A stretch of DNA of 64,000 bases from IMGVR_UViG_3300028840_008185:62001-126000; one strand, 5' to 3'. Shown: positions 11,112 through 42,046, counted from the stretch's first letter. Numbers and translations are program-made. Notes: generated from the sequence alone by a model not told the origin.

Positions 11112-11409
11112 CTTTCCTTATTGATCTAATGGCCAACATAGCAATCAGGAAGCCAATTAAATCGCTAATAGTATCACCAACAATTTTATTTATGAATAAC
11201 TCGTTACCCGCATATGGGAAGTTGGGTATGTTTTGAACAACCCAATGTTCAAACACTTCCCACATGAAAGCAATTCCAACAGCACCCATCCAAGCATGAC
11301 GCCTGAATACAGAGTATAACATAACCGTGATGGCTATAAACCATACTACATGGTGCAGAGAATACGTATCGAATAAACTAGTCCCTGCTTTTCCCCAAAT
11401 TAGATCCAT
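10999..11409 (-). CDS. Small membrane protein
   Basis: 3 TM helices; HH, WEVFE and GD residues; overlaps rpsU. Confidence 0.55.
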   Translation of the reverse strand: MDLIWGKAGTSLFDTYSLHHVVWFIAITVMLYSVFRRHAWMGAVGIAFMWEVFEHWVVQNIPNFPYAGNELFINKIVGDTISDLIGFLIAMLAIRSIRKDENERRQKTSLEEEREKRAQSEAIGGGSQGRRSGRGD

Positions 11410-12727: not shown

Positions 12728-12728
12728 A

Positions 12729-12857
12729 TTACCACCATATCTCCTGTTCTGGGAACAGAAATTTGCGTCCCCATCGATCATAGACCAAAACCCACTCGTC
12801 ATTATAATAAAATTCGTGGATATAAACCCTACCCAAAACAGGATTCCAGCCGGCCAT
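12729..12857 (-). CDS. 42-aa aromatic-rich microprotein
   Basis: Hand translation MAGWNPVLG...EIWW; exactly fills the gap between genes. Confidence 0.5.
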   Translation of the reverse strand: MAGWNPVLGRVYIHEFYYNDEWVLVYDRWGRKFLFPEQEIWW

Positions 12858-14184: not shown

Positions 14185-14185
14185 T

Positions 14186-26935: not shown

Positions 26936-29113
26936 TCACTTATCCTCCAATTCATCCATCCAATCGGTAATGTCTGCGAAGCACCCGTGCATTGGGTTCT
27001 CTGCACTAACTTGCCTCCGCAATTCTGCCCAACGGTTCCGCAACTTGGCGTTGTCCGCGATTTGCCCACGCAGAATATCGCCTTGCTCGTCAAGCTCCGT
27101 CTCCAACTTTTCAACCCGATCTTGGAGACTATCGCGCAGGGCACAGTCTTTACAAATGTGCTGTTCGCAAGTTTCACAAAGATCCACATCCACAAGAGGC
27201 GAGCGCTCATCTTTTTTCCAGGATACTCCCATCACTCATCTTCCTTGCGCAGGGGGATTACCTGGTATGCCTCTAAGGTGAATCTAATTGCGGATTCGGT
27301 ATTGTCCCGCAATTCCTCTTCTCCGCGACGACGGCCAACACCATTCCAAGAGGCGTTCATCATTGCGTCTTGCACCAGATCCGCAATCAAATGTTCGGCT
27401 TCAGAAGCGTTTATCTTATCCTCTTGTAGCGATTCAACCAATTGTTCCAACTCTTTCACGCGGGCACGGAGAGCAGCATTTTTTTCGGTCAGCATATCAT
27501 ATGAGACTGGCATCACTCACGCCCCCATGTCCGCCCAGTTTCAGGCCACCTCACCAACGTCTTCTCTACAACACCCTGATATTTATGTGCATCCAATAGT
27601 CCAGCCCTATACAAATCATCTACGATTTGTCGGGCGAGAAAGTCAGATATATTCTCCCAATCATCAAACGTGATTTTGTTTTTATCATCAGTCATTTATA
27701 ACCTGCCGTTCCACAACTTCATCAAAGCGGTAAGGGCCACTCTCCATAGCTTCCCTAAGTTTGTCTAACAGATACAGTGGCAGCGTGGCTTCAACTGTCT
27801 GACCAGAAACCGACATAGATGCCCAATTCACGCGGCAATGAAACGTTTCAAGAATCTCCCCAATTTTTTAAACTTCCTTATCAGGTTCTCCCTGCGCTCC
27901 CTACGATCAACGCCGGTTATTCCAAACTTATACTGGATGGTTATTTTCTGTTCTCCACTTGCAACAAAATCTGGGTCGAGAGGCTTATAGGTTCCAGCCG
28001 TGGTGTGAAGGTTCAGATCATTATCTACAGTTAAAGCAATCCGGATCATCTTAATTGGCCAACCAACAATCATGAACGGGCTGGGATTATTAAGGGCCAT
28101 GGAAGCAAGCCACAATATAATACCAATGCCCAAGTATATCGCAAGGCAAATGCCTATGATTATTCCTACAAACAAAGTCATCAGTATCCCCAATCCTCTC
28201 GTTCTTTCAGCGTTTCTTTAATCTGCCTTCGCATAGCGGTGGTGAGTTTCCAGTAAAACTCATAGTTCTCACCTTGGCCACCCTTACCAGACTGAGGAAA
28301 CCAAGACTTCCGCATAAGGCTCAAAGCCCTAGCAACCAGATCCAAATCGCAAGCGTCTGTCACTAGCTCATCTACTTCTTTGCCGCTGGTTTTGCCTTGA
28401 GCAGCAAGGCTCTTGATGTATTCCCTGTATGGCTTCCAGGCATCATATATAGGGGCACCAGCAAAACCCCTATCGTTGAAGACTACAGCAAACTGATTAT
28501 CATATCTGCTTGATTTCTCACACCTATCATTCCGCGAGTTAAATAGCATATGATCTTTCAGCTCATCGCTCAACATATCTTCCCCATAAATTTCTTTCAG
28601 TCTCTCCGCTTCTTCAACAAGAAACTTCATGAAATATCTGGCATCTTGGCGCATATGTTTTCTTGGATAAGTCTCACAATATCTTTCGTATGATGTTCTA
28701 ACACCCTTGAGAGATAGGGCTATATCTTCCAAAACCATAAATAAGCCGACGGGGAACTTTTCTATGTATCTTCTTTCTTCCTTATCTTCAACATAGAAAG
28801 TATAACTATCTCTCTCAACCTGGTCATTTAGTAAAGTTTCGATGTCTGGAAACTTATCTCCCTCTGTGTCTCGGAAAATATCCAGAATCAACTCCGTGTT
28901 ATAGTTCTCCTCAATGCTCTCTATTCCGCCGTAATCGTTATACTTCCCGCGAATAGGAAGCGTCATAGGAAAACCCAAGTCTGTTGAGTAGCAGTGACCA
29001 CTTGAACTGGGGTTGTCTCTATAACCGGCAACACCAATAAGAAACGCCCAAATCCTTTGGCCTGCTAAGATTGGCATTTGGCTAATGCCGCAGGTTCCAT
29101 TCCAACAGCCCAT
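26936..29113 (-). CDS. Hypothetical proteins (26936-27235, 27232-27516, 27513-27695, 27828-28193, 28181-29113)
   Basis: Coupled minus-strand ORFs; no recognisable family. Confidence 0.5.
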
Positions 29114-29664
29114 TAGTCCTCCCTCTTCATTGACCGCACGCGGAAGGGCGCACAGACACCAGCACTGAAATATGCAGCAATTTCCAGCGACTTCTTGATT
29201 CGAGTCTCTGGCTTTAGTTTCGCAAGTGCGGACATAGCACCCAGGGCAAACTGGCTTCCGCAACCCACAGCATCAAAACCATCAGACATTTCTGACACTT
29301 GGAAGTCGCCATGCATGGTATAGATCTTGCCCTTGTAGGCAACTATAAAAGTGCCGCCCGTTTCGTTGTTGCTTGCGATGGTAGAAAACCCCTTTTCCTT
29401 AAGCAGCTCTCTTACCTTCTCCGCAAACTGAACCACCATATATTCTTGGTCGCTCTGTTTAGGATTCTGTGCAGGAACTTCAAGCCAGTGTTCAAGTAGC
29501 TGACCCATACGAAAACTGGTAGTGTATCCAATAATAAAGGGGCCGCGCTTAAAAACTTTAGGCACGTTGGTAGGTCTGGTGATTAATTTATCCACATTCA
29601 CCGACGCAGAATCGGCACCAACATAAACACGGTCTTTACCCACCAAGCCAATAATACAGGTCAT
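29113..29664 (-). CDS. N-terminal Thr (Ntn) hydrolase, proteasome-beta/HslV-like
   Basis: M-T-CIIG start behind GGAG; GADS; PKVFK; AVGCGSQFALGAM. Confidence 0.75.
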   Translation of the reverse strand: MTCIIGLVGKDRVYVGADSASVNVDKLITRPTNVPKVFKRGPFIIGYTTSFRMGQLLEHWLEVPAQNPKQSDQEYMVVQFAEKVRELLKEKGFSTIASNNETGGTFIVAYKGKIYTMHGDFQVSEMSDGFDAVGCGSQFALGAMSALAKLKPETRIKKSLEIAAYFSAGVCAPFRVRSMKRED

Positions 29665-29665
29665 T

Positions 29666-29947
29666 CTATTCTCCAATCAAATATGTTTCGATGTATTCTT
29701 TCACCTCGTTTGGAGCTATACCGGGGCCGCTCCACTCGCCAGTTTCTCTATCTTGTTTCAAGTCCAAACCTGGATAGAGATCATGATAAGATATTCTATG
29801 AACTTTCCTATCTGGGGATCTCACAAGAACACCTGGATTGCTGCCACTTCTCACCACAACCCATTGCCACTCTTGGCCATCCACATGAACTTTTCTCTCA
29901 TTTTTCCACGCCATCATCCACCTCGTCCACCTCGTCCCATTCGACAT
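29666..29947 (-). CDS. Hypothetical protein
   Basis: 93 aa ORF. Confidence 0.5.
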   Translation of the reverse strand: MSNGTRWTRWMMAWKNERKVHVDGQEWQWVVVRSGSNPGVLVRSPDRKVHRISYHDLYPGLDLKQDRETGEWSGPGIAPNEVKEYIETYLIGE

Positions 29948-30070
29948 TCACATCAAAGCCTAGGTCGGAAAACAACTTTCTAAGCACCGAGATGCGATAT
30001 TCAAAACTAGAGTGTTCTTCTACTTCCATGCGCTTGATAAGAGCAAAAAATACTAACCTATCTTTTTGTT

Positions 30071-30622
30071 TCACGGCATCTCCTTGAGACTCTCCACGAG
30101 CTTTCGTGATTCCAGATATTCCAAAACCGCCTTCGGAACCATGTGGGAAACATCTTTTCCTTGTTTAAGGAGCCAGCGTATATAAGAAGAACGAATCTGC
30201 AACACTGGATTGCTGGCGTATAGCTGGGCAGGAACCCACATAATATCCGCCAACTCTCTAATTTCATCACTCTTATACCACTTTTTATCAAACTCAAAGA
30301 ACAGGTCATCACCCAAGATAAGAGTATAGCGAGCTTCCGGATAGTCTGCAATTAAGTATTTCAACAAGTCGTAAGTTCTTCCAGTGTTTATTTCCTTTTC
30401 ATAATCTACAGCCATGACATTATGAGGGAAAAGCTTCCTAACCATGATGTTGCACATATATAACCGATTATAAAAAGACAGCATCTTATCTTTGAACGGA
30501 TGCTTATAGCAGGGAGCAACCAAAATCTCATCGAAATCTTCCCTGGCCAGAGCATATTGAATCATTGCAGCATGGCCTATGTGGGGCGGATTGAAGCTTC
30601 CTCCTACAATTCCTATTCTCAT
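30071..30622 (-). CDS. nadD: Nicotinate-nucleotide adenylyltransferase
   Basis: GGSFNPPHIGH, ILGDD, IRSSYIR. Confidence 0.9.
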   Translation of the reverse strand: MRIGIVGGSFNPPHIGHAAMIQYALAREDFDEILVAPCYKHPFKDKMLSFYNRLYMCNIMVRKLFPHNVMAVDYEKEINTGRTYDLLKYLIADYPEARYTLILGDDLFFEFDKKWYKSDEIRELADIMWVPAQLYASNPVLQIRSSYIRWLLKQGKDVSHMVPKAVLEYLESRKLVESLKEMP

Positions 30623-30632
30623 TTTAATCTCC

Positions 30633-31115
30633 CTAGTGTGGAACCGGTCTATCACACTCTATAACTATGACCTTGAAACCTTCGTATTCGCTGGGCAAGT
30701 CGGACTTTGAGCCATCTATTAAGTAAGCTTCGATGACTTCCTCACCATCTTCAAGCCCTATACCACAGCCCCACATATTACCATCGGTGTGGTTCATACT
30801 AAAAGAATCCACAGCTCTTTCTATTGGGCTCGGCTCTTCCAGAGCCCTTTCCCAGCCATATACCAATGGCGGATCCACACGCACTTCCTCATAGAGAACA
30901 ACCTCACCCTTTTTAACTGCTTCAATTTGACTTTGGAGCCAACCTATCGCACTTTCAGCAGCATTCACGAAAAGTATTGAGGCAGCGGTTTTTCCCATTT
31001 GCCATGCCATTCCTGGAGGGGGCAAAGCCCCAAAACCAAATTCTCTTTTTGGCGTGTCTTCTGGCAGTGGACAAGGGCTGGGAGGAACAGAATCCTCAAA
31101 GTCTCTCTTACCCAC
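30633..31115 (-). CDS. Hypothetical protein
   Basis: 160 aa, coupled to vWA gene. Confidence 0.5.
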   Translation of the reverse strand: MGKRDFEDSVPPSPCPLPEDTPKREFGFGALPPPGMAWQMGKTAASILFVNAAESAIGWLQSQIEAVKKGEVVLYEEVRVDPPLVYGWERALEEPSPIERAVDSFSMNHTDGNMWGCGIGLEDGEEVIEAYLIDGSKSDLPSEYEGFKVIVIECDRPVPH

Positions 31116-31899
31116 CGAAACCTCCCATTGCCGTCTTGCTAAAGTTCATGCTGCTTTGGCTGGCCTGAACTGCACTCTTGCTGAACAACTGGAAAGCCCT
31201 GCGAATTTCAGTTGGGGTGTTCTGTGGCGTGAGAATCCACTCGTCCCTGAGCCCCATCTCTTTGAAAACCTCACGAAAGCTTGTAGCACCACCATCATCA
31301 AAACCCATGGCCGCAACGATATGATTTTCTTGGCCAAGCATATCAGCCACAATGTTCTTTACAGCCGCAGCATCATGGCGACTGGAGTGTAGGTCACGTC
31401 CATCAGTCATAACAAGAGAAATCGTTCTCACAGGAACTCCGTTGTCCGCAAACTCGAAAGTCTTGGCGAGAACAGTGCCCAGAAAAGAAACTGTTTCATC
31501 ATAAAGGGGCGTGCCCTGATTGGGGTCGTAATTGCTTCTATCCATTTCAACGGCTTGATCAAGCGAACAATACGGATAAAGAACCCCGCCGTTCAAGTAT
31601 CGAGTATGGGCCAAGATATTATCCTGCTGCTTGGAATCCGTCAAAGCACGAATCAACTCATTGTGGCCATCACGAATCGGCTGGGCATTCCCAGAGAATC
31701 GAATAGAACCAGAATCATCAACCATTACGGAAACAAGCACAACCTCACTTGCCTCGACATCATCAACATCCACACCCAAGCCAGCCTGAATCTGCTGACC
31801 AATATCATGAACCATTAGAGCCTGGGAAGACTCAGGAGAAAGAAGCCCTTCATCCTGAGCATCTTCAAAAAGCTCATTAATATTCTTGCTTTCACTCAT
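31108..31899 (-). CDS. vWA domain protein (TerY-like)
   Basis: MIDAS DDSGS, GTPLYD, MTDGRD. Confidence 0.8.
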   Translation of the reverse strand: MSESKNINELFEDAQDEGLLSPESSQALMVHDIGQQIQAGLGVDVDDVEASEVVLVSVMVDDSGSIRFSGNAQPIRDGHNELIRALTDSKQQDNILAHTRYLNGGVLYPYCSLDQAVEMDRSNYDPNQGTPLYDETVSFLGTVLAKTFEFADNGVPVRTISLVMTDGRDLHSSRHDAAAVKNIVADMLGQENHIVAAMGFDDGGATSFREVFKEMGLRDEWILTPQNTPTEIRRAFQLFSKSAVQASQSSMNFSKTAMGGFGG

Positions 31900-32437
31900 T
31901 TGATTCCTCCAAATCATAAACATACACATCGCACGCTGTAAGCAAAGCTCCGATAAGCTCACTTACAATTCCCCAATCTCCGCCGCCCAAACCGCAACCA
32001 ATTCGCGGCATATGGATTGAAAGGTGAGTGTTAGTGGGCGGCAGAACCATACGACTCTTTAGATGACAATAGTGACCAATCCAGTTGTTCAAATCAGCCA
32101 GACATGCACAAAGCATATCATACCTAACGGCAACTGGATGGTCTGGAGCAGTGTATCCCTCTTGTGCGATCATGTTGCACACATAGAGCGGACCTTCCTT
32201 TTTAGGATCTTTCACCTGGACGAGTTGTATTTGCCCCAGCGGCAGCGTTTTGTTTGTGTCGTCCGTAGCCCACTTGAACCACTCTCTATACTTTCTCTCT
32301 GGTTCAGGCCACTTGTTAGACAGGGCAACAACAAAACCGCTCCCCCAACCTCCAAGATCATTACAAATATGAGCGATGATTCTCGCTCCCTTATTAACCT
32401 GGGGCTCTGTGGCATCGCCAGTTAGGTAGTGTATCAT
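31892..32437 (-). CDS. Macrodomain ADP-ribose hydrolase (TARG1/DarG/Poa1-like)
   Basis: GDAT, IAHICNDLGGWGSGF, MPRIGCGLGGGDW. Confidence 0.9.
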   Translation of the reverse strand: MIHYLTGDATEPQVNKGARIIAHICNDLGGWGSGFVVALSNKWPEPERKYREWFKWATDDTNKTLPLGQIQLVQVKDPKKEGPLYVCNMIAQEGYTAPDHPVAVRYDMLCACLADLNNWIGHYCHLKSRMVLPPTNTHLSIHMPRIGCGLGGGDWGIVSELIGALLTACDVYVYDLEESNE

Positions 32438-33459
32438 AGGGTAATCCCATCCCAGGTGGTAATTGGGTCAGTAGATTTAACAACATGCATCCCAGCCTTC
32501 TGGAACCTCTCGAAAGCCTCGTTAGCCTGGTCGGTGAAATCGATGCCAGGAATCACAACCGGAGAGGTGCAATCCTCCAGAAGATAAACCTTCTTGACCA
32601 GCTTGGGATCCTTGGTGTTAATCTCATTGAGCAGATCGTCAATCGTCCAAGCAACACAGTGAGACTTAGCCTGGCCAGCAATCACAACCGCATCAAAGTT
32701 GAGCAGCTTCTCGATAAAAGCAGTGTTCTTCTGGGCAATAGCAACGCCCTTTGCGGTGGTAAGAACTTCTGGACGAAGCACCGAATAGTTCTCAGTCAAG
32801 GGATTTCCACCCTTAATCTGGAAGTCGGTCTGGCTTCCACGAGCGATGTCATGGAAAAAGATGGCTTCTTCAAGAAGGGGAACAAGCGCATGGCCAACTC
32901 CACCAAGCATCGCGTGGTGTGGCCAGATAAGCAAAGCATACTTGCCCTCGTCAGCGAGAGTCTGTGTGTAGTGAAGGGCATACTTATGAAGCCCGGTGTA
33001 GCTGGCGTTAAGAACGCTGGCCATAACCGGATTCACCTTCCACACGCCCTTCTTAACATCGTCCGCAGAAATCATAGTGACACCGGGAGGAGGATGCTCA
33101 CCCTCATCATTGACCCAGAAATCCTGGTGGAAAATCTGCTTGCTCAAGTGAGTGTCCATCGTGGGAGAAATATTGGTAATTACATCCATATTCCTATAGA
33201 TAAACTCACAAAGCCGCACGATGTCTTTGTCCGCATCTACCACAGAAAGCTCCCCATCGGGATACGGCATACAGAAAGTATTCTGGCAGTCAATAGCAAT
33301 CAAGCAGACGCGAAGCTTATCTTTGGCCGCAGGCTGGAGGTCATGTCGCTTGGCCCACTCCTTTGCCCTGGTGAAAATATCCTCATACTTAACATGGAAA
33401 AGCTCATTAACTTTGCTCGCATCAAAGTGCGAGGGAACCGGAAGATCCAATTTACTCAT
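32434..33459 (-). CDS. pncA: Nicotinamidase (isochorismatase fold)
   Basis: IDCQNTF (Asp), MDTH, WPHH, KGGNPLTENYS (Lys), GQAKSHCV (Cys). Confidence 0.8.
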   Translation of the reverse strand: MSKLDLPVPSHFDASKVNELFHVKYEDIFTRAKEWAKRHDLQPAAKDKLRVCLIAIDCQNTFCMPYPDGELSVVDADKDIVRLCEFIYRNMDVITNISPTMDTHLSKQIFHQDFWVNDEGEHPPPGVTMISADDVKKGVWKVNPVMASVLNASYTGLHKYALHYTQTLADEGKYALLIWPHHAMLGGVGHALVPLLEEAIFFHDIARGSQTDFQIKGGNPLTENYSVLRPEVLTTAKGVAIAQKNTAFIEKLLNFDAVVIAGQAKSHCVAWTIDDLLNEINTKDPKLVKKVYLLEDCTSPVVIPGIDFTDQANEAFERFQKAGMHVVKSTDPITTWDGITL

Positions 33460-33470
33460 TTGTTTTCTCC

Positions 33471-35327
33471 TTATGAAATCGTAAGCAGCCTAATCTCGTG
33501 TTTGGACACAACATATAGGCCATTTTTGGAAACTAGAAGGTGGCAGCCTGAATCAACAAACGGCTCAGTATCAGGAAACTCTTTAGCAACATCCAGCATC
33601 CCGCCGCCTGGTTCAACTCTAACAATGCCGTCATCTGTGGCGGCAAACAAGAAGTTCCCAGCGGCAGCCTTACCACGAATCCTACCCAGCCAAGTTCCAT
33701 CGCCTTCTATACCTATTGCCGAATCTCCAACTCTACCGTCGGATTTGATAATAACACACCTGTTAATCGTTTGGCCTTTCTCCCTTGTTGAATAGAAAAA
33801 CCATGCCCAGTCACCAGCAAAATAGCAGGTGGCATCAATCAACTGCCCTGGAATTATAGGCATCTTCACCGTATCGTTGATTCCTCCTTTATCGGCGTTG
33901 AATAGAAAACCAACATTAATATTACCCGCTCGGTAAAAACCGAAACCAAACTTGGGGCCAACCCAAAAGAGTGTTTGTCCTCTAAGCACATCTCCTATGT
34001 ATTTTGGCCCAACCCTTTCATCTCTAAACAATTGACCATCATAAGACCAATATTTATGATTCCCATTTGAATCAAAAAGCGTAAGCATATTGAGGCTATC
34101 CACAGCAACCTTGCTTGGCTGGCCGCCGGGAACTATGGAAACAAACTGACCATTACTACCAATCAACGTTTCCTTGCCCTTGATTCTAAATCTCATCGTG
34201 GGGCTCAACGAGCCCTTTACCACTTCTACTTCATTTTCCCTAATGAATCTATTATCTTTGTGATACAAATATCTCAGCTTATCATTTTGAACGGTGGAGT
34301 AGATGATGAGGCCAGGCGTCTGAAACACACGAACGCACTTGATATTGCCCCTGATTGTTTCCACAACTGCCATGGGAGAATAAGTTGCACAGCCAGGACA
34401 CACACGCTTCGCGTGAATTGTCCCGCATTTAATACAAGTTGTCCATCTTATATCCAGTAGGTTCTCTGGATACTCGCCTCTCTTGTCCTCTTGAAATAGC
34501 AGATGAAAGTGCTGAAGCATATCATCTGGTAGGACATCATAATGAGTCGCGGGCTTAGGATACTTAACCTCTGAATTAAATACCGTGATTCTCTTCAGCG
34601 GTCTCTCGCCCTGCTTAACTCTCTTTGATTTGTCTTTTGGCTTGTAGATTCCACCATACGGGCCAACATAAAGTAAGCTCTGCATGAGCATAATGGCGTA
34701 AGCATACCAATCAGATCCCTCGTTGTGGCTCCTGGTTAGAATTGGCCTGGTTTCATTTGGGTCGCAAAGTAGCGGATCCACAAATCTTTCTGTGAAAAGA
34801 TGACAGAGAAAGCCTCCATACTGGAAACTATCCGCATCAATTATGTGAGCTTCATCGCCCTTTATCATTATGTTAAGGTCATTGAAGTCCCCTATGATTG
34901 CTCCAGCCCTATGGATCCCTTTAACCGTGGCGTGAAGATCCTTGAAGACTTCAATAACATCTTCGTTGCTCACGCCCGCTTGTCTGTATGAGCGATCAGA
35001 ATACTTCAGGAGAACTTCGCAGCCTTTAAGAAAGGGCATCACATAGCCAACTACTTCTTTGCCGTTTTTGTTGGTGAGTATGCCATGGGGAGCTACGACC
35101 CTGCCCGGCAGATTCTTGGGAAACGCGGGAAGCTTCGTTTGGTGCTCGGCTATTCTTATCTTGGCCGCTTGTTGTTCATGGGGGAAGCCTCGGAAATCTG
35201 GGTGGTTGGGCTGTTTGAAAACCTTGAAGGCCATGTTGCCCTTGGCGAAAATATCTGCCTCGCCACCCTTGCCGATTGAATCGGCGGGATTAAGACGATA
35301 CTGCTTGCCGTTCAGATATACTATCAT
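33471..35327 (-). CDS. Ser/Thr kinase with Zn ribbon and beta-rich C-terminus (TerY-K-like)
   Basis: IGKGGEADIF, AFKVFK, GDFNDLNI, IDADS; CIKC...CPGC. Confidence 0.8.
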   Translation of the reverse strand: MIVYLNGKQYRLNPADSIGKGGEADIFAKGNMAFKVFKQPNHPDFRGFPHEQQAAKIRIAEHQTKLPAFPKNLPGRVVAPHGILTNKNGKEVVGYVMPFLKGCEVLLKYSDRSYRQAGVSNEDVIEVFKDLHATVKGIHRAGAIIGDFNDLNIMIKGDEAHIIDADSFQYGGFLCHLFTERFVDPLLCDPNETRPILTRSHNEGSDWYAYAIMLMQSLLYVGPYGGIYKPKDKSKRVKQGERPLKRITVFNSEVKYPKPATHYDVLPDDMLQHFHLLFQEDKRGEYPENLLDIRWTTCIKCGTIHAKRVCPGCATYSPMAVVETIRGNIKCVRVFQTPGLIIYSTVQNDKLRYLYHKDNRFIRENEVEVVKGSLSPTMRFRIKGKETLIGSNGQFVSIVPGGQPSKVAVDSLNMLTLFDSNGNHKYWSYDGQLFRDERVGPKYIGDVLRGQTLFWVGPKFGFGFYRAGNINVGFLFNADKGGINDTVKMPIIPGQLIDATCYFAGDWAWFFYSTREKGQTINRCVIIKSDGRVGDSAIGIEGDGTWLGRIRGKAAAGNFLFAATDDGIVRVEPGGGMLDVAKEFPDTEPFVDSGCHLLVSKNGLYVVSKHEIRLLTIS

Positions 35328-35985
35328 GCAACCCTTCCTTGAGACAAGGTAAGAAACAGAGTCTTAAACATAAGATTCTGGCCCAAATCAGACCTATTTC
35401 TGGCAAAATTAACACCCATCCAGAATATTGCCGGGGATACAGCCCCGACATGAGGAGCAATGGACACTCGTAAGTCTGAAGTATAAACCAGTTTAATCAC
35501 TTTAGCCATTTTCTCAAACCCCAAGACACCAGACCTAGCAAAGTGTCGTCCTCATCGTCAAAGGTCCAAAGCTCATTTAGGTTGTTGAAAAACAAACCAG
35601 TGAGGAGACGCCAAAAGTTAAGGGTCCTTTTTGACGCAGAACGAATTGGCTCAATCATTTCCCCACCTGCTTAATCCCCATCCACCTAATGTCCCCATAA
35701 GTAGTTTGTGTCCAGCAAGAACTATGCTTGGTCTAATATAGTTCAACAGGAAGTTGCCCATATTATATGTGGCGGCACTCACTTGTTTCTCACTTAGCCA
35801 TTTTCGCCTGTGATCGGCCCAAATTGGAATTATCACCATGAGTAGCCCCAACAAAAATCTCTTGGACGAAGCGCATGCACAAATAAATCACCAAGATGGT
35901 ATAGGGGATGCGACTCAAACTGAAATGCAAACTGAACCCAGAGTTTATGGCGATGCCGGTGGTTATTACTATTATCTATTTTCAT
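35324..35985 (-). CDS. Four microproteins between kinase and PP2C (35324-35524, 35497-35658, 35651-35854, 35833-35985)
   Basis: Two found by hand: MIEPIRS (53 aa) and MKIDNS...KLWVQFAFQFE (50 aa). Confidence 0.5.
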
Positions 35986-36805
35986 CTTTCCGTCTTATAG
36001 CAACCACGGTTGTATCATCCTTCAGGTGTCCATGCTGACGAGTAGCCACGCCATCAACTACCTTCACCACTTCTTTATTTATCCTGACCAGGCGCCTTTG
36101 TAAAGCCATTTTGTTGGTGAAGTATTTGTCCTTTGTCCAGAACTGGCTAAGTGGCCCAACCAACTCATCTTTGCCTGGGATACTCTTATTCTCGGCAGCC
36201 TGAAAGTCATCAAGCCCATCTGTCCCAATCACTAAGCTCTGGAAATTTTCAGCAAGGATTATCTCATTAACTTGAAACTTGGGGTTCCTAAACCGTTCAT
36301 CAACCGCCTGCGGAACAATACCGTATGAGGAATAGGGTGGGGCATTATTGGGAAAGGGGCCAATAGTTTTGACCTCTCCGTTTAGGGCATACACACCATC
36401 ACCAATGGACGCAATAGCAACCCAATACTTAGTAATGATGGCCACCATACAGGTGAATAGGAAATAGTCTTTAACAACCCCGACCAATTTCTCCTCAACT
36501 TTTCCTGTCCCCCAGATCATTTTCACGGCCAAGTCGGTGATATTGACGTTCAATTCCACGAGCCCCGTCACTTCCGTTTTGTCGAGGTCTCCAATATCCG
36601 CAATAAGTCTAAGCTGGTGGGGCAACATATATGCTGCAATCTTAGCTCCCACTTCGCTGTGAGCACCGCTTCCACAACCATCACAAACTACAGCAACTAT
36701 ACTGTCTGGTCTATGGACAACATTGTAGGCGTCGTGGTTATTCTTGTTGAGCCGCAAGTGGTCTTTGCCGATCACAGAACCGGCAGCAATCTCAAACCCC
36801 TTCAT
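35972..36805 (-). CDS. PP2C-like phosphatase (TerY-P-like)
   Basis: GKDH...NHDA, VCDGCGS, IGDG, GTDG, DDTT. Confidence 0.85.
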   Translation of the reverse strand: MKGFEIAAGSVIGKDHLRLNKNNHDAYNVVHRPDSIVAVVCDGCGSGAHSEVGAKIAAYMLPHQLRLIADIGDLDKTEVTGLVELNVNITDLAVKMIWGTGKVEEKLVGVVKDYFLFTCMVAIITKYWVAIASIGDGVYALNGEVKTIGPFPNNAPPYSSYGIVPQAVDERFRNPKFQVNEIILAENFQSLVIGTDGLDDFQAAENKSIPGKDELVGPLSQFWTKDKYFTNKMALQRRLVRINKEVVKVVDGVATRQHGHLKDDTTVVAIRRKDENR

Positions 36806-37115
36806 CTTCAGCCTGTTCCTTTAGCTGGCCTCGCAACTTCTCATTTTCTTTAACCAACACTTCGGTGCCCGCTTGTAAGGCTGCAAACATCTCCCTAACC
36901 TTAGCTGTAGAGGCTAAGGTAAGTTCGTTAAGAAAAAACAGAATGCCACCAAACACCCAGCCAATTCCCGCACCGAAGTCACTCATAGTGCCTCTAAACC
37001 CATTTGCCGCATTAACAACTACCAGTGCTGCTACAACTACCATAATAACAAGACGCATGGTGTTGCCTTTATAAAAATCTCTGAGAATATCAAAAATAAT
37101 CTTTAATTTTTCCAT
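36792..37115 (-). CDS. 2-TM protein with coiled-coil tail
   Basis: Hydrophobic helices. Confidence 0.55.
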   Translation of the reverse strand: MEKLKIIFDILRDFYKGNTMRLVIMVVVAALVVVNAANGFRGTMSDFGAGIGWVFGGILFFLNELTLASTAKVREMFAALQAGTEVLVKENEKLRGQLKEQAEDEGV

Positions 37116-37127
37116 AGGTGCCTTCTC

Positions 37128-38489
37128 CTAACCAGTTGAAACTGTTTCTTTTGGCCTGCCGTTGCCCCTTTTTCTTCTTTTGAGTCTCCTCGCTGTTTTG
37201 CTTACCAGTTGTGGGCCATCTGGGCTTACGGGCTCATCACCCTCCTCTTCATTGCACACACCAGCCATCGTCTTCATGTGCTCCACAACCTCTTTCAATT
37301 CCTCAAACTTACCCTCGGTAATCGCCTCCTTGATTTCACCATACTGTCTAACAGTAATCTGGAGAGCCACTTCTCTCAAATAAGCAGGCGTCATACCTTC
37401 AGTAATTTCAGCAACTTCATCAAGATAAGCATTGGCCAGGCGCATCTCGAAAGAATCAAGGTAGGCTTTGACTATCGCTCTGCGCTGTTCAACATTGGGA
37501 AAATCAAACATGATGATCTCATCGAATCTTCCAGGGCGCCTCATCGGCTCGGGCAACTCGCCCAGATGATTCACGGCGCCCATGATTACTACGTTGCCAC
37601 TTCCCTTATATCTGTTGAGCGCTTCGACAGTGCCCAGCAGCATATCTAATCCCTGCTCTCCAATCCTATCCATATCATCAAACAAAACGACGCTCGGAGA
37701 AAGAGCCCTAAAGATCTTCTCCAAGGGAAGAGAATACTCCGACGCAAAGTTGAGAGCAGGAGCATCTATCACTATAAGCTGGCCATCGAGCATACTGGCT
37801 ATTTTAGCGGCCAGAGTCGTCTTTCCACAACCGGGCGGACCAAAAAGTAGGGAAGATCGATTGAGATTCATCTTCTGGAACCTCTTGATATTATCGAAGA
37901 ACTTTCCCTCATCGAAAGTAGAAACGTATGTATCCAGCGGAATCTCTATCTCTCTAATGCGGATGAATGTGTTCCAACCCTCTATGCCCATAACAACCGA
38001 GATGTTTTGGCCCATGTTTTCTCGAACGACTTTCGAGAAGGCATCAATAAACTTATCCTCGTCCTCTGCCCACATCCCTTCTAAAGACCCATTTTCAATA
38101 GCAAAATAGGCATCACAACCAGGCAACTCATAAAGAACAGTTCTAATATCACTGCCCTCTTCTTTCTTAACGAAAGGAGTGGAGTAAGGATAGTCAATCT
38201 CTTGTAGAGCATAATAAACAAGGCGTTCCATCCTATAAAGGATGGGCTTCAGACCAGTATCGCGCAGTCTGGACAAAAGATCCTTCTCCTCTTTTTCAAA
38301 GATCTTTTCAAGAGCATCGTAAGTGCTGGCCAAACTCATGCCCGCATATATAAGATCCTTCTTCTTGATGGCCAAATATATCTCAAAGCCAGCTCTACCA
38401 ACGGCTATGGCCTTTCTGATCTTCTCCTTGATCTTTCTCTTGTCGCGCCTATATTCTATTGTCGATTCTTTGTCGCGCTCAAACATCAT
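37128..38489 (-). CDS. Classic-clade AAA ATPase
   Basis: GPPGCGKT, VLFDDMD, second region of homology VNHLGELPEPMRRPGRFD. Confidence 0.9.
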   Translation of the reverse strand: MMFERDKESTIEYRRDKRKIKEKIRKAIAVGRAGFEIYLAIKKKDLIYAGMSLASTYDALEKIFEKEEKDLLSRLRDTGLKPILYRMERLVYYALQEIDYPYSTPFVKKEEGSDIRTVLYELPGCDAYFAIENGSLEGMWAEDEDKFIDAFSKVVRENMGQNISVVMGIEGWNTFIRIREIEIPLDTYVSTFDEGKFFDNIKRFQKMNLNRSSLLFGPPGCGKTTLAAKIASMLDGQLIVIDAPALNFASEYSLPLEKIFRALSPSVVLFDDMDRIGEQGLDMLLGTVEALNRYKGSGNVVIMGAVNHLGELPEPMRRPGRFDEIIMFDFPNVEQRRAIVKAYLDSFEMRLANAYLDEVAEITEGMTPAYLREVALQITVRQYGEIKEAITEGKFEELKEVVEHMKTMAGVCNEEEGDEPVSPDGPQLVSKTARRLKRRKRGNGRPKETVSTG

Positions 38490-39394
38490 ACCACCAGACC
38501 TTTTCTCTTCAAGTAATCTCGTGGGATTTCTGGGGGCGGCTCAGCCTTATGACGAGTGGCTTTCTCCATTTTCCTCATGGCCCTAACAACTTTACACTGC
38601 TCTTCCGTATAGCCGAACTCCTCGGGGTCAGTATCTTCCGCCAAACCCCGAATCAAGCCAAAATCTTCATCCTCTCTGCTGCACCACTCAATAGTTCCCA
38701 TCTCTTCTTGACCTGGGCGAGTGTAAGTTAGTGGAACTCCACAGAGATCTTCTAACTCTTCTTCGTCGTTGTGTTCCTCACCAACTCCCCAAAGATCTGG
38801 AGTAGGAACGGCATTGATGATCTCCTCTGGGACGCCCAGATGTTCCGCCAATTCCCATACTTCGCTCTTAAACAAGGAACCAATCCAATTAGAATCGACT
38901 TCTCCATCGCCTCCCTTTTGGTAAAACCGAACATACTGATCTTCATCCCTGTTTCCTGTTCCTTGTCTAATCCCTCCGCCAAACAACCTATTCACGAAGC
39001 GCCCAACGGGCGCCCTGATACAACTTCTAAAGCTGCCGTAAGTTGTTGGGTTCTCATTTTCATCAGGCCAAGGGAGCCCAAGACGCTCAAACTCTCGCCT
39101 AATTTGGGCACGAACCGTAAAGAACACGGGAGCCAGGTGTAGCTCTATGAAATTGAATCCAAAAGTCTTAGCAACCAATCTGGCTCGTCTAAGAGACTCG
39201 GGGGAAGAATTAACATCGCTATAAACCCCGATTACATTTTCGGAGCCAAAAGCCCTACAAGCCAGAGCAGCCACAACGGCACTATCAACGCCACCAGAAA
39301 TATCAATCTCAGCTTTGTCTGTATGAGCTTCGTTGGCCTGCTTTCTCATATACCAAACTATCTCTTCAACGAGCTTTTCGTAATCAAGAATCAT
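38486..39394 (-). CDS. nadE: NH3-dependent NAD+ synthetase
   Basis: ISGGVDSAV, GTGNRDE, KGGDG, LFKSEV, PTPDL; no glutaminase domain. Confidence 0.93.
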   Translation of the reverse strand: MILDYEKLVEEIVWYMRKQANEAHTDKAEIDISGGVDSAVVAALACRAFGSENVIGVYSDVNSSPESLRRARLVAKTFGFNFIELHLAPVFFTVRAQIRREFERLGLPWPDENENPTTYGSFRSCIRAPVGRFVNRLFGGGIRQGTGNRDEDQYVRFYQKGGDGEVDSNWIGSLFKSEVWELAEHLGVPEEIINAVPTPDLWGVGEEHNDEEELEDLCGVPLTYTRPGQEEMGTIEWCSREDEDFGLIRGLAEDTDPEEFGYTEEQCKVVRAMRKMEKATRHKAEPPPEIPRDYLKRKGLVV

Positions 39395-40027
39395 TTGGAT
39401 CCTCCTTCATGGCTCCATTTACGACAAGAACAATCTGGCCGTCCTCAGTATCCGTACAAGAATCATTAAGGTTGTCTCTAACATGATTATAATAAGTCTG
39501 GCTTATGTTCTTTTCCAACCAATTCAATATAGCCTCTTTAATCTCATGTTCGGTAAACTTGATGTTGATCATCTTTTCTATTTTCATCCCTCATCTCCCG
39601 CCTTGATCTCTTCATAGAGTTCCTCAAGGAGCTTCTCGGCTTCCTGTAGCTCCTTCTCAACGATCCCCATCATTATGCTTTTCTTGAGCTTATTGTCTCC
39701 CTCGTCCAATTCTTTCAGTTCTTTCAGGAGCTTATCTCTTCTGGCCTTGTGATATGCGAACTGAACAATCTTGGGAGATCTGGCCAGTTTGTTTTGGAAC
39801 TCCACATTGTCTTTATCTTTTGGGTTTATGGGCTTCTCGGCGCGAGAAAGTCTGTCCGCTTCTCTGCCGATTCTTAAGAGAACGATAAGCCGATGATCGG
39901 AGGCATCCTTGTGCCTATTCCCCGTGGCAGTTTTACCACCCTTGGGCTTAACCAGCTCGCCGTAGGTCTTGGCTCCAGGCAGTATTGGATGTCCCTTTTC
40001 GTCGCGCTTTATTTTTTTGCTCGGCAT
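39384..40027 (-). CDS. Two hypothetical proteins (39384-39587, 39584-40027)
   Basis: Coupled ORFs. Confidence 0.5.
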
Positions 40028-40036
40028 GTTTCTCCT

Positions 40037-41913: not shown

Positions 41914-42046
41914 ATGTTCCTCCTTATGAAATCGTAGACTGTTCCAGCCACGCGGAACGGCCACTCAACATAATCAAATATAGTACATCTCAAATCAAAT
42001 AGCTTTTGATCTAAGGTTCTTTCGGGCTCTTCTTCAGACTCAATCC

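What the first reader, a model, noticed from the sequence alone, without database searches (positions are those of the whole stretch)
30071..36805. TerY-P-like triad (PP2C, kinase, vWA) fused into the NAD/ADP-ribose operon
Seen, in transcription order: PP2C, kinase, PncA, macrodomain, vWA, ORF, NadD, with NadE and the AAA just upstream. Known: the vWA/PP2C/kinase TerY-P triad is a bacterial stress/defence phospho-switch. Inference: phosphorylation control of NAD+ recycling or ADP-ribose removal, repurposed by a phage-like element.
Basis: partly seen in the sequence, partly recalled or inferred. Interest (0 to 1): 0.65.

Follow-up and report, generated by a model that had tools for sequence, protein, structure and literature searches.

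The report
Phospho-switch nicotinamidase module in jumbo phage
A giant phage carries a four-gene module (phosphatase, kinase, nicotinamide-deamidating enzyme, vWA protein), also found in bacteria under an ADP-ribose-sensing repressor, set among enzymes that together could rebuild NAD+ from nicotinamide, possibly a regulated counter to NAD+-depleting host defences.

Summary
On the minus strand lie NadE, AAA ATPase, PP2C, kinase, a nicotinamidase-like enzyme (PncA), macrodomain, vWA, a 160-aa ORF and NadD, mostly overlapping. The genome is a 318-kb virus record.

The vWA/PP2C/kinase set has TerY-P architecture, including a zinc ribbon after the kinase. No PADLOC family matches it, and the kinase carries an extra beta-propeller.

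The main result is that the triad was not simply fused to NAD genes in this phage. PP2C-kinase-PncA-vWA recurs as a cassette in about 20 other loci:
- **Cellular copies** (cyanobacteria, Patescibacteria, other MAGs) sit beside the ADP-ribose-sensing repressor NrtR. They have NrtR-type operators upstream and often an ADP-ribosylglycohydrolase.
- **Large-phage copies** (this window and three relatives) lack NrtR and its operators. They are joined to NadE, NadD, PncB and a macrodomain.

This phage encodes PncA, PncB, NadD and NadE, a complete nicotinamide-to-NAD+ (Preiss-Handler) route. Catalytic residues of the kinase, PP2C, PncA and the vWA metal site are conserved.

My best reading is a phosphorylation-gated nicotinamide-salvage and ADP-ribose clean-up module, used by the phage for NAD+ reconstitution. 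All biochemistry is inferred. I found no description of it in the literature I could search, and rate it a new variant of known kinds.

The parts
38486..39394 (-). NadE, a single-domain NAD+ synthetase (302 aa)
   Evidence: Pfam NAD_synthase 2e-28; NCBIfam TIGR00552 at 102 bits, above its 63.65 cut-off. Its end overlaps the start of the AAA gene by 4 bases. NadE lies next to the cassette in L004, L006 and L049 too.
37128..38489 (-). Classical AAA+ ATPase (453 aa) with an N-terminal ~200 aa of unknown function
   Evidence: Pfam AAA 2e-19; weak similarity to PAN/CDC48/FtsH and IetA-type models, all below cut-off. The same position directly upstream of PP2C is kept in relative L006. It is not part of the cellular cassettes.
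36792..37115 (-). 107-aa ORF of unknown function
   Evidence: An open frame only. No family match and no homologue in the related loci.
35972..36805 (-). PP2C-type Ser/Thr phosphatase (277 aa)
   Evidence: Pfam PP2C_2 5.5e-17. The metal-binding Asp residues D25, D42, D136, D196, D263 and D264 are invariant in 12 homologues.
35328..35971 (.). 644-base spacer between PP2C and the kinase, holding only unconserved short ORFs
   Evidence: The ORFs at 35324-35524 and 35651-35854 have no homologues in related loci. No Rfam match. Relatives hold other genes here, such as an actin-fold gene in L006, or nothing, as in L049.
33471..35327 (-). Atypical Ser/Thr kinase (RIO/Bud32-like) + zinc ribbon + C-terminal beta-propeller (618 aa)
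   Evidence: Weak Pkinase match (0.003). Invariant in the family are the Gly-rich loop, K35, D147 and D164/D166, and the Zn-ribbon residues C298/C301/C310/C313; N152 is kept in at least 90% of the 10 sequences. The zinc ribbon matches Nop10. In the AlphaFold model the C-terminal ~300 aa is all-beta at pLDDT 85-93, and Foldseek finds LRRK2 kinase-WD40 and the propellers Ycf48 and BamB. 2021 homologues, none with an informative name.
32434..33459 (-). Long-form nicotinamidase-like cysteine amidohydrolase ('PncA', isochorismatase fold, 341 aa)
   Evidence: Weak Pfam and NCBIfam matches, below cut-off. The catalytic D57, K216 and C268 and the metal ligands D102, H104 and H182 are invariant in 15 homologues. 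The best solved relative by profile is M. tuberculosis PncA, 3pl1. Atlas neighbours are named nicotinamidase. Family members outside the cassette sit directly before NAPRTase and behind NrtR operators.
31892..32437 (-). Macrodomain of the ALC1-like/SCO6735 type (181 aa), a predicted ADP-ribose hydrolase
   Evidence: PDB 2afc 3.8e-33, 2fg1 5.8e-33, 5e3b 'Macrodomain protein' 2.5e-32; phrog_335 2.6e-29. It overlaps PncA by 4 bases. Homologues lie near the cassette in L003, L006 and L049.
31108..31899 (-). vWA protein with an intact MIDAS metal site (263 aa from the ATG at 31899)
   Evidence: The MIDAS residues D61, S63, S65, T130 and D166 are invariant in 9 homologues. AlphaFold model at pLDDT 90.4. 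Foldseek gives 202 vWA-domain matches at E<=0.001. No Pfam or PADLOC match.
30633..31115 (-). 160-aa ORF of unknown function, a conserved accessory gene
   Evidence: Homologues occur in L006 (4e-14) and, directly after vWA, in L049. No family match.
30071..30655 (-). NadD-like nicotinate/nicotinamide mononucleotide adenylyltransferase (194 aa)
   Evidence: Pfam CTP_transf_like 1.6e-11. NCBIfam NaMN adenylyltransferase models PRK08887 (1.7e-29) and TIGR00482 (3.9e-29), both below their cut-offs. NadD also lies beside the cassette in L029, L033, L049 and L050.
11378..12802 (-). PncB, nicotinate phosphoribosyltransferase (474 aa). It lies 20 kb away and completes the pathway.
   Evidence: NCBIfam TIGR01513 at 409 bits (cut-off 297) and PRK12484 at 401 bits (cut-off 330). 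Pfam NAPRTase_N 3e-29. It is the only NAPRTase-family match in the genome.
28181..29676 (-). HslV/proteasome-like subunit (29113-29676) and an actin-fold (ASKHA-like) protein (28181 to about 29113), possible accessory genes
   Evidence: Pfam Proteasome 2.5e-07 and a weak FtsA match. The actin-fold gene lies between PP2C and the kinase in L006, at 44% identity. Whether these belong to the module is uncertain.

Best explanation
The region holds a conserved four-gene module:
- a PP2C phosphatase;
- an atypical Ser/Thr kinase fused to a zinc ribbon and a beta-propeller;
- a long-form nicotinamidase (PncA-like);
- a vWA protein with a MIDAS metal site.

In cells this module is an operon next to, and apparently repressed by, the ADP-ribose-sensing regulator NrtR. 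It often includes an ADP-ribosylglycohydrolase. That pattern fits a response to NAD+ cleavage. NAD+ cleavage yields nicotinamide plus free or protein-bound ADP-ribose. PncA would turn nicotinamide into nicotinate, and the glycohydrolase would remove ADP-ribose.

In this jumbo phage the module has lost NrtR and its operators. It sits with NadE, NadD and a macrodomain, and PncB lies 20 kb away. The phage therefore encodes every step from nicotinamide to NAD+ (PncA, PncB, NadD, NadE) plus an ADP-ribose hydrolase.

I propose that the phage uses this to rebuild NAD+ and clear ADP-ribose during infection, for instance when host NADase defences fire. I further propose that the kinase/PP2C pair sets the phosphorylation state of the vWA protein or of PncA. 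The vWA MIDAS site would act as the adaptor that binds a phosphorylated or acidic peptide, so that salvage is gated after translation.

**Shown:** gene content, domain architectures, conserved catalytic residues, conserved linkage, and NrtR genes and operators in cellular copies with their absence in the phage.

**Inferred:** all enzyme activities, who phosphorylates whom, and the anti-defence role.
For: **The cassette recurs.** PP2C-kinase-PncA-vWA is found in:
- phage-like contigs L001, L003, L004, L006 and L049;
- MAG contigs L009, L010 and L029-L033;
- cellular loci L038-L044 and L050, and Neosynechococcus.

**Kinase and PncA travel together.**
- Of 23 kinase-bearing loci, 21 hold PncA within 10 kb.
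- In 201 sampled cyanobacterial species genomes the kinase occurs in 4, and in all 4 PncA and vWA are adjacent.
- Cassette-linked PncAs cluster apart from a clade of PncAs that occur without the triad. The tree needs 3 label changes against 13 in shuffles, with 0 of 500 shuffles as low.

**The NAD/ADP-ribose link recurs.**
- An NrtR gene lies adjacent in L010, L029-L032, L038, L039, L041-L044, L050 and Neosynechococcus.
- TAGTGT-N7-ACACTA palindromes, often paired, lie within about 320 bases upstream of the first cassette gene. There are 21 hits at <=1 mismatch in 664 kb, against about 1.5 expected. This fits the 21-bp GT-N7-AC NrtR motif of PMC2330246.
- An ADP-ribosylglycohydrolase is inserted in L038, L041 and L042.
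- NadE, NadD, a NadD-NAD-kinase fusion, PncB, NADAR or Nudix genes flank the cassette in L004, L006, L010, L029, L033, L049 and L050.

**PncA identity.** The catalytic triad and metal ligands are conserved. The best PDB relative is PncA. Family members outside the cassette sit directly before NAPRTase.

**The pathway is complete in this phage.** PncB passes NCBIfam equivalog cut-offs. NadD and NadE are identified.

**Active sites are kept.** Kinase, PP2C, vWA MIDAS.

**The phage copy is deregulated.** The genome has no NrtR, ADP-ribosylglycohydrolase or Nudix match, and the window has no operator.

**It is a virus.** IMG/VR virus record of 318 kb; a tail-protein PHROG, ribonucleotide reductase and helicase are present.
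Against: - No experiment or expression data. Only DNA runs hold the sequence.
- PncA and NadD score below curated family cut-offs, so substrate specificity is inferred. PncA could act on NMN, nicotinamide riboside or another amide.
- One cellular locus (L050) carries a canonical short PncA beside the cassette. The cassette enzyme may therefore not be a plain nicotinamidase.
- The window's PncA, like L006's, lacks 3-5 residues of a conserved loop just after the catalytic Asp.
- Nothing shows that the kinase targets vWA or PncA. The one complex prediction gave no verdict.
- The cassette is rare and patchy (2% of sampled cyanobacteria), which also fits a conflict system.
- No NADase-defence context or host is known for this phage.
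- My split of contigs into 'phage-like' and 'cellular' rests on neighbouring genes and NrtR, not on complete genomes.
Confidence: 0.55

Rival explanations
1. The cassette is chiefly a conflict (defence or counter-defence) system of the TerY-P kind. The kinase/PP2C/vWA switch would sense infection or ADP-ribosylation. The isochorismatase-fold hydrolase would be its effector, acting on NAD(P), on an NAD-derived signal or on another amide, rather than doing housekeeping salvage. The phage copy would serve superinfection exclusion or would disarm the host's version.
For: - TerY-P-like architecture, including the zinc ribbon after the kinase.
- Rare, patchy distribution across distant phyla and phages.
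- Neighbours such as Uma2 nuclease-fold genes and toxin-antitoxin genes in L038 and L039.
- Resemblance to the NrtR + ADP-ribosylglycohydrolase + phosphatase + vWA systems proposed to counter viral ADP-ribosylation (PMC9503650).
- A canonical PncA coexists with the cassette enzyme in L050.
Against: - No PADLOC family matches any component.
- The enzyme keeps the nicotinamidase-type triad and metal ligands.
- Its relatives outside the cassette form classic pncA-pncB pairs under NrtR operators.
- Flanking genes are biosynthetic (NadE, NadD, PncB, NAD kinase) rather than nucleases or other toxic effectors.
- A deamidase of free nicotinamide is not an obvious toxic effector.
Confidence: 0.2
2. The vWA protein, possibly with the phage's AAA+ ATPase, is a metal-insertion or assembly chaperone for the metal-dependent PncA. 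This would parallel known AAA+/vWA pairs such as NorQ/NorD, CoxD/CoxE and the Mg-chelatase subunits. The kinase and PP2C would only tune this maturation step.
For: - An intact MIDAS in vWA.
- Conserved metal ligands in PncA.
- vWA immediately follows PncA in most loci.
- In the window and L006 an AAA+ gene directly precedes PP2C.
- That AAA+/vWA pairs act as metallochaperones is my own knowledge, not tested here.
Against: - The AAA+ is of the classical CDC48/FtsH-like type, not MoxR, and is absent from all cellular cassettes.
- PncAs outside the cassette function without a vWA neighbour.
- The complex prediction of PncA with vWA gave no verdict.
Confidence: 0.1
3. The juxtaposition is incidental. 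A signalling triad and NAD genes merely lie side by side in a gene-dense phage genome, with no functional link.
For: - Gene order around the core differs among the related phages.
- A 644-base spacer separates PP2C from the kinase in the window.
- The scans found no operon-defining promoter or terminator.
Against: - The kinase-PncA-vWA linkage holds in 21 of 23 loci from phages and several bacterial phyla.
- NAD/ADP-ribose genes and NrtR recur beside it in unrelated genomes.
- The PncA subfamily tracks the triad on the tree.
Confidence: 0.03

Closest known systems
TerY-P triad (Anantharaman, Iyer and Aravind 2012, as summarised in PMC11090510; stand-alone defence version of Gao et al. 2020)
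   Same: Three linked genes for a vWA protein with a MIDAS site, a PP2C phosphatase and a Ser/Thr kinase with a zinc ribbon C-terminal to the kinase domain.
   Different: - No PADLOC family matches, and Pfam vWA models miss the vWA protein.
- The kinase carries an additional ~300-aa beta-propeller after the zinc ribbon.
- A nicotinamidase-like enzyme is a fourth, near-constant member.
- The partners are NrtR and NAD/ADP-ribose enzymes, not Ter proteins or restriction systems.
Phage NAD+ reconstitution pathways NARP1 (Adps + Namat) and NARP2 (Nampt + Nmnat) (Osterman et al. 2024, as summarised in PMC13728456)
   Same: Phage-encoded enzymes that could rebuild NAD+ from the products of NADase defence effectors. 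An adenylyltransferase and a phosphoribosyltransferase are present.
   Different: - The route here is the four-step deamidated (Preiss-Handler) path: PncA, PncB (a nicotinate, not nicotinamide, phosphoribosyltransferase), NadD and NadE.
- It is coupled to a kinase/phosphatase/vWA set and a macrodomain.
- A 2022 survey of viral NAD+ systems lists only NadV, NadM and NadR for phage NAD+ synthesis (PMC9503650).
- No anti-defence activity has been tested.
NrtR regulons for NAD salvage (pncA-pncB, nadD-nadE) (Rodionov et al. 2008, PMC2330246)
   Same: Cellular copies of the cassette sit beside an nrtR gene and behind 21-bp palindromes with a GT-N7-AC core. pncA, pncB, nadD and nadE are classic NrtR targets, and ADP-ribose releases NrtR from DNA in vitro.
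   Different: - That paper's tables list no kinase, PP2C or vWA genes in the regulon.
- The phage copy has neither NrtR nor operators.
ADP-ribosylglycohydrolase-centred systems predicted to counter viral ADP-ribosylation (Iyer et al. 2022, PMC9503650, section 3.8)
   Same: A Nudix-wHTH (NrtR-like) repressor, an ADP-ribosylglycohydrolase, a phosphatase, a vWA 'chaperone', and optional Macro or NADAR genes. Several cellular cassettes contain NrtR + the glycohydrolase + PP2C + vWA.
   Different: - Those systems use rhodanese-type, calcineurin-like, HD or HAD phosphatases.
- That paper never uses the terms PP2C, isochorismatase, nicotinamidase or 'protein kinase'.
- Here the constant core is kinase + PncA + vWA, and the glycohydrolase is optional.
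Deinococcus radiodurans vWA-kinase-FHA-PP2C operon DRA0331-0334 (bioRxiv 10.64898/2026.01.23.701218)
   Same: An operon combining a vWA protein, a Ser/Thr kinase and a PP2C phosphatase as a signalling module (abstract seen).
   Different: That operon has an FHA protein and a DNA-damage context, and no nicotinamidase or NAD genes. I did not compare the sequences.

Membership tests
TerY-P triad | A vWA (TerY-like) protein with a MIDAS site | tested here: met
   vWA fold (pLDDT 90; 202 vWA matches) and invariant MIDAS residues. Whether it belongs to the TerY subfamily was not established; Pfam vWA models do not match.
TerY-P triad | A PP2C-type phosphatase gene in the same neighbourhood | tested here: met
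   PP2C_2 5.5e-17. Metal-binding Asp residues are invariant.
TerY-P triad | A Ser/Thr kinase fused C-terminally to a zinc ribbon | tested here: met
   Kinase motifs and a CxxC...CxxC ribbon are conserved, and the ribbon matches Nop10. An extra beta-propeller follows, which the definition does not include.
TerY-P triad | Sequence match to the TerY-P defence-system profiles (PADLOC) | tested here: not met
   No PADLOC family matched at E<=0.01 except stray hits (PDC-M21C 0.009; MkoA 0.002). That PADLOC-DB contains TerY-P models is my own knowledge.
TerY-P triad | Association with Ter proteins or restriction/DNA-processing systems | not tested
   None was seen among the neighbours examined. I did not screen the whole genome for Ter genes.
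Nicotinamidase (PncA, isochorismatase-like hydrolases) | Asp-Lys-Cys catalytic triad on an isochorismatase fold | tested here: met
   D57, K216 and C268 are invariant in 15 homologues. The segments align to M. tuberculosis PncA D8 and C138.
Nicotinamidase (PncA, isochorismatase-like hydrolases) | Metal-binding Asp/His ligands typical of nicotinamidases | tested here: met
   D102, H104 and the WPxH histidine H182 are invariant. The WPxH segment aligns to PncA W68-H71. Assigning these as metal ligands rests on my knowledge of PncA.
Nicotinamidase (PncA, isochorismatase-like hydrolases) | Score above the curated family cut-off | tested here: not met
   Pfam Isochorismatase 19.4 bits against a cut-off of 27. 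NCBIfam nicotinamidase 17.7 bits against 174. It is a divergent long form of ~340 aa.
Nicotinamidase (PncA, isochorismatase-like hydrolases) | Genomic pairing with pncB or membership of an NAD regulon | tested here: met
   NAPRTase directly follows family members outside the cassette (L015; probably L018, L021 and L027). NrtR operators lie directly upstream in L011, L025 and L026.
Nicotinamidase (PncA, isochorismatase-like hydrolases) | Hydrolysis of nicotinamide to nicotinate | not testable with these tools
   Needs an enzyme assay.
Phage NAD+ reconstitution pathway NARP2 | Nicotinamide phosphoribosyltransferase (Nampt/NadV) plus NMN adenylyltransferase | tested here: not met
   The only phosphoribosyltransferase of this family in the genome passes the nicotinate-PRTase equivalog cut-offs. 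The adenylyltransferase is NadD-like.
Phage NAD+ reconstitution pathway NARP1 | ADPR-pyrophosphate synthetase (Adps) plus nicotinamide ADPR-transferase (Namat) | not tested
   I did not search for these families.
NrtR regulon | An NrtR gene and/or a 21-bp GT-N7-AC palindromic operator upstream | tested here: not met
   Not met for the window: no NrtR_WHD or Nudix match in the genome, and no operator at <=2 mismatches. Met for the cellular homologues.

The most novel reading that the evidence does not exclude
PP2C-kinase(Zn ribbon, beta-propeller)-PncA-vWA is a previously undescribed module that gates nicotinamide deamidation by phosphorylation, and in cells it is induced by ADP-ribose. Jumbo phages have captured it, removed its repressor, and combined it with PncB, NadD, NadE and a macrodomain. 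The result would be a third, regulated phage NAD+ reconstitution pathway (a Preiss-Handler 'NARP3') that counters NADase-based immunity.
Probability: 0.3. Interest if true: 0.8.

Novelty: new variant of a known kind. Interest (0 to 1): 0.62.

Why it matters
NAD+ depletion is a common end-point of bacterial antiviral immunity, and only two phage routes for rebuilding NAD+ have been characterised.

- **A possible third route.** A four-step deamidated route in jumbo phages, tied to a kinase/phosphatase switch, would add a third route. It would also be the first with built-in post-translational control, which bears on the reported cost of unregulated NAD+ overproduction by NARP2.
- **A testable output for vWA/PP2C/kinase triads.** For cells, the cassette links a TerY-P-like triad to a defined enzyme (a nicotinamidase) and a defined inducer (ADP-ribose, through NrtR). 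The function of such triads has stayed speculative.
- **A family worth naming.** About 2000 kinase homologues are annotated as hypothetical or misnamed Nop10 or Bud32. They would gain a functional context.

Tried and rejected
- **DNA search against phages.** A distant-mode DNA search of the region against 50,697 phage records found nothing, so all relatives were found at protein level.
- **PADLOC.** No match to any defence family for the triad.
- **Sequence-profile search of PDB.** The vWA family gave only chance hits; the fold had to be predicted.
- **Complex prediction, PncA with vWA.** No verdict (score 0.00, controls not run). This is neither for nor against binding.
- **Rfam scan of 28000-41000.** No match.
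- **Promoter and terminator scans.** Terminator-like sites were no more frequent than in shuffles (10 against 10.0). Promoter-like sites were only about 2 sd above (25 against 16.4, sd 4.0), and none marks operon boundaries.
- **Short ORFs in the 644-base spacer and the 107-aa ORF.** No homologues in related loci. I do not count them as genes.
- **Direction of transfer.** The kinase tree separates a cyanobacterial clade (98) from the phage and MAG rows but does not resolve donor and recipient. I dropped my earlier idea that this is a cyanophage that took the cassette from cyanobacteria.
- **Host.** Unknown. The DNA occurs in marine sediment and seawater metagenomes.
- **Expression.** No RNA run holds the sequence, so I did not use read laying.
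- **NAD+-consuming enzymes in the phage.** Pfam SIR2 and the ADP-ribosylating exotoxin family were not found; other transferase families were not searched.
- **Literature.** Six full-text searches found no paper describing the combination. The original TerY-P paper is not held, so its definition comes second-hand from PMC11090510.

Full report
**Setting.** The window is bases 62001-126000 of a single 318,373-base contig held as an IMG/VR virus record. Almost all long ORFs lie on the minus strand. Elsewhere the genome encodes a tail-protein PHROG, ribonucleotide reductase, a DNA helicase and phage-only families of unknown function. I treat it as a jumbo phage with an unknown host. The DNA is found in marine sediment and seawater metagenomes, and no RNA run holds it.

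**Checking the observation.** In transcription order (minus strand) the region holds the following genes.
- NadE, 38486-39394: NAD_synthase 2e-28; TIGR00552 above its cut-off.
- A classical AAA+ ATPase, 37128-38489.
- An unconserved 107-aa ORF.
- PP2C, 35972-36805: PP2C_2 5.5e-17.
- A 644-base spacer.
- A 618-aa kinase, 33471-35327.
- A 341-aa isochorismatase-fold protein, 32434-33459.
- A 181-aa macrodomain, 31892-32437.
- A vWA protein, 31108-31899.
- A 160-aa ORF, 30633-31115.
- A NadD-like adenylyltransferase, 30071-30655.

Three calls were weak by family scan, so I tested them separately.
- **Macrodomain.** It matches the solved macrodomains 2afc, 2fg1 and 5e3b at 1e-32 to 1e-33.
- **vWA.** It has no Pfam match. 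Its MIDAS residues (D61, S63, S65, T130, D166) are invariant in nine homologues. Its AlphaFold model (pLDDT 90.4) gives 202 vWA-domain matches.
- **Kinase.** The Pkinase match is only 0.003. Across ten homologues at 47-62% identity, the Gly-rich loop, K35, D147 and D164/D166 are invariant and N152 is kept in at least 90%. A CxxC...CxxC zinc ribbon follows (it matches Nop10). Then comes an all-beta domain of ~300 aa that Foldseek matches to beta-propellers and to the LRRK2 kinase-WD40 arrangement.

The PP2C keeps all its metal-binding aspartates.

**What the 'PncA' is.** The 341-aa protein belongs to a large family of ~340-350-aa proteins that sources annotate as isochorismatase or nicotinamidase-related amidase. 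D57, K216 and C268, the Asp-Lys-Cys triad of cysteine amidohydrolases, are invariant. So are D102, H104 and the WPxH histidine, which align with the metal ligands of M. tuberculosis PncA. That protein is the only solved structure the family profile finds. Atlas neighbours are named nicotinamidase.

Context agrees with this reading. Where family members occur without the triad, the next gene is a nicotinate phosphoribosyltransferase in a Bacteroidota genome, and a related phosphoribosyltransferase in Herpetosiphon and Poribacteria. NrtR-type operators lie directly upstream in Prochloron and Anaerolineae. I therefore call it a long-form nicotinamidase. Its scores are below curated cut-offs and its substrate is untested.

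**The linkage is conserved.** This is the main result. Protein searches and local HMMs built from the hits show the same four genes, PP2C, kinase, PncA and vWA, together in many loci.
- **Phage and phage-like contigs.**
  - A gut phage fragment, L001.
  - Two huge phages, L002 and L003; no PncA was found in L002.
  - A 253-kb IMG/VR phage, L004.
  - Two large phage-like contigs syntenic with the window, L006 and the 461-kb L049.
- **MAG contigs.** L009, L010 and L029-L033.
- **Cellular chromosomes.**
  - Neosynechococcus.
  - Leptolyngbya sp. 'hensonii', L038.
  - Aerosakkonema funiforme, L039.
  - A 1.7-Mb metagenome contig, L040.
  - Four randomly sampled cyanobacterial species, L041-L044.
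  - A Patescibacteria MAG whose neighbours include transketolase and an rRNA methylase, L050.

Of 23 kinase-bearing loci, 21 have PncA within 10 kb. The exceptions are L002 and a Prochloron MAG, where the kinase lies on a different contig from PncA.

In a sample of 201 cyanobacterial species genomes, the long PncA occurs in 60 and the kinase in 4. In all 4 the kinase is adjacent to PncA and vWA.

On a PncA tree, the cassette-linked proteins cluster apart from a well-supported clade of 16 PncAs that occur without the triad. The tree needs 3 label changes against a shuffled mean of 13. Relatedness inflates such counts.

**The NAD/ADP-ribose connection is also conserved, and it predates the phage.**
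- **NrtR genes.** Cellular cassettes sit beside a Nudix-winged-helix NrtR gene in 12 fetched loci and in Neosynechococcus.
- **Operators.** Upstream of the first cassette gene, often as a pair overlapping a TTGACA box, lie palindromes of the form TAGTGT-N7-ACACTA. This fits the published description of NrtR sites as 21-bp palindromes with a GT-N7-AC core (PMC2330246). At <=1 mismatch there are 21 sites in 664 kb of fetched loci, against about 1.5 expected. Nearly all lie directly upstream of the cassette or of a PncA outside it.
- **Inducer.** The same paper showed that ADP-ribose releases NrtR from DNA in vitro. The cellular cassette is therefore plausibly switched on when NAD+ is being cleaved.
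- **ADP-ribosylglycohydrolase.** Three cyanobacterial cassettes carry one between PP2C and the kinase. One locus has NrtR|glycohydrolase-PncA with no triad.
- **A full salvage island.** The Patescibacteria locus embeds the cassette as NADAR, NrtR, PP2C, kinase, PncA (with a 235-aa N-terminal extension), vWA, a canonical short PncA, a NadD-NAD-kinase fusion, Nudix and PncB.

**What is special about the phage version.**
- The phage genome has no NrtR, Nudix or ADP-ribosylglycohydrolase match.
- The window has no operator, even at two mismatches.
- The related phage-like loci L004, L006 and L049 also lack NrtR.
- In place of NrtR, the cassette is interleaved with NadE, NadD and a macrodomain. It is further interleaved with a conserved 160-aa ORF and, in L004, with PncB.
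- In this genome PncB lies at 11378-12802 and passes two NCBIfam equivalog cut-offs for nicotinate phosphoribosyltransferase.

The phage therefore encodes all four steps from nicotinamide to NAD+ (PncA, PncB, NadD, NadE) plus an ADP-ribose hydrolase. Gene order around the core differs among the four phages, yet the same set stays within about 12 kb. That argues for selection on the set rather than inheritance of a frozen block.

**Mechanism.** I think the most likely function is regulated salvage of the products of NAD+ cleavage. NAD+-consuming enzymes (ADP-ribosyltransferases, sirtuins, the NADase effectors of Thoeris, DSR, SIR2-HerA and others) release nicotinamide and free or protein-bound ADP-ribose. 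PncA converts nicotinamide to nicotinate. PncB, NadD and NadE then rebuild NAD+. The macrodomain (the glycohydrolase in cells) removes ADP-ribose.

The kinase and PP2C, both apparently active, form a reversible switch. By analogy with TerY-P, the vWA protein is the likely substrate or adaptor. Its MIDAS site could bind an acidic or phosphorylated segment, and its conserved Ser-rich C-terminal tail is a candidate acceptor. The beta-propeller and zinc ribbon of the kinase are candidate docking or sensing domains.

In cells there would be two layers of control: NrtR with ADP-ribose at transcription, and the phospho-switch afterwards. The phage keeps only the second layer. This fits the published point that unregulated NAD+ overproduction by NARP2 is a liability.

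None of these biochemical steps is shown. I put 0.55 on the general statement and much less on any particular wiring.

**Rivals.**
- **A TerY-P-like conflict system with the hydrolase as effector (0.2).** The patchy distribution, the mobile and toxin-antitoxin neighbours, and the second canonical PncA in L050 favour it. The nicotinamidase-type active site, the pncA-pncB pairs and the biosynthetic neighbours count against it.
- **A vWA (plus AAA+) metallochaperone for PncA (0.1).** This borrows from known AAA+/vWA pairs. The AAA+ is phage-only and not MoxR-type.
- **Chance juxtaposition (0.03).** The conserved linkage contradicts it.

**Comparison with known systems.**
- **TerY-P.** The triad works like one and meets its architectural definition, but it fails the only sequence-membership test available. 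It also differs by the propeller and by the fixed fourth gene.
- **NARP1 and NARP2.** The NAD+ route is neither of these. A 2022 survey of viral NAD+/ADP-ribose systems lists only NadV, NadM and NadR for phage NAD+ synthesis and never uses the terms nicotinamidase, PncA, PP2C or isochorismatase.
- **Glycohydrolase-centred systems.** The cellular cassette overlaps in theme with the systems proposed in that survey (NrtR-like repressor, glycohydrolase, phosphatase, vWA). Its phosphatase class differs, and its core is a kinase and a nicotinamidase.
- **Literature.** Full-text searches found no paper describing the combination. The library is incomplete, and the original TerY-P paper could not be read.

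**Limits.**
- Alignments hold 9-15 sequences.
- Trees were 'quick' searches with many unresolved forks.
- Calling a contig phage-like or cellular rests on neighbouring genes.
- ORFs in fetched loci were called mechanically.
- The operator motif was derived from the same loci in which it was then counted.
- No expression or biochemical evidence exists.

**Verdict.** The finding is better described as a conserved PP2C-kinase-nicotinamidase-vWA module, under NrtR control in cells, that jumbo phages carry without its repressor inside a complete nicotinamide-to-NAD+ gene set. I rate it a new variant of known kinds, with interest 0.62.

Noticed in passing
window 13297-15226 (-): A ThiF/E1-like protein (322 aa, ThiF 1.8e-15) overlaps a protein with a weak prokaryotic JAB-domain match (346 aa). 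This may be a ubiquitin-like conjugation/deconjugation pair in the phage, just downstream of PncB.
   Followed up: no
window 29113-29676 and 37128-38489 (-): An HslV/proteasome-like subunit (Pfam Proteasome 2.5e-07; weak HslV match) and a classical AAA+ ATPase with an unknown 200-aa N-terminus flank the module. Together they might form a phage-encoded protease-unfoldase pair.
   Followed up: partly
window 28181-29113 (-); L006 6424-7317: An actin-fold (weak FtsA match) protein of ~300 aa lies downstream of the module here, but between PP2C and the kinase in relative L006 (44% identity). It may be a further accessory of the module.
   Followed up: partly
window 35328-35971: A 644-base stretch between PP2C and the kinase has no conserved ORF, no Rfam match and no similarity to the genes that occupy this position in relatives.
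   Followed up: partly
window 32434-33459, residues ~64-72 of the protein: The window's PncA, like L006's, lacks 3-5 residues of the otherwise conserved 'LFVGGRSG' loop that follows the catalytic Asp motif in homologues. The effect on activity is unknown.
   Followed up: no
L050 11869-13611; proteins P0016, P0027, P0030, P0123: Some cassette PncAs are 580-585 aa, with an extra N-terminal ~235 aa that has no Pfam match.
   Followed up: partly
window 8873-10261, 25200-26093, 40804-41964, 42047-43456 (-): Other auxiliary genes in the window: an ATP-dependent DNA ligase, an RlaP-family nucleotidyltransferase, a saccharopine-dehydrogenase-like protein, and a CCA-adding/poly(A) polymerase with an HD domain. 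Several are syntenic in L006 and L049.
   Followed up: no
L014 8233-11038: A MAG locus has NrtR divergent from an ADP-ribosylglycohydrolase-PncA pair, with an exact NrtR-type palindrome between them and no kinase, PP2C or vWA. It may represent the simpler operon from which the cassette was elaborated.
   Followed up: partly
L033 4444-5865; L050 16607-17989: A fusion of a NadD-like adenylyltransferase with an NAD kinase domain (460-473 aa) lies close downstream of the cassette in two unrelated loci, directly after vWA in L033.
   Followed up: no
whole window: GC skew is negative in every 2-kb bin across all 64 kb, and nearly all genes lie on the minus strand.
   Followed up: no
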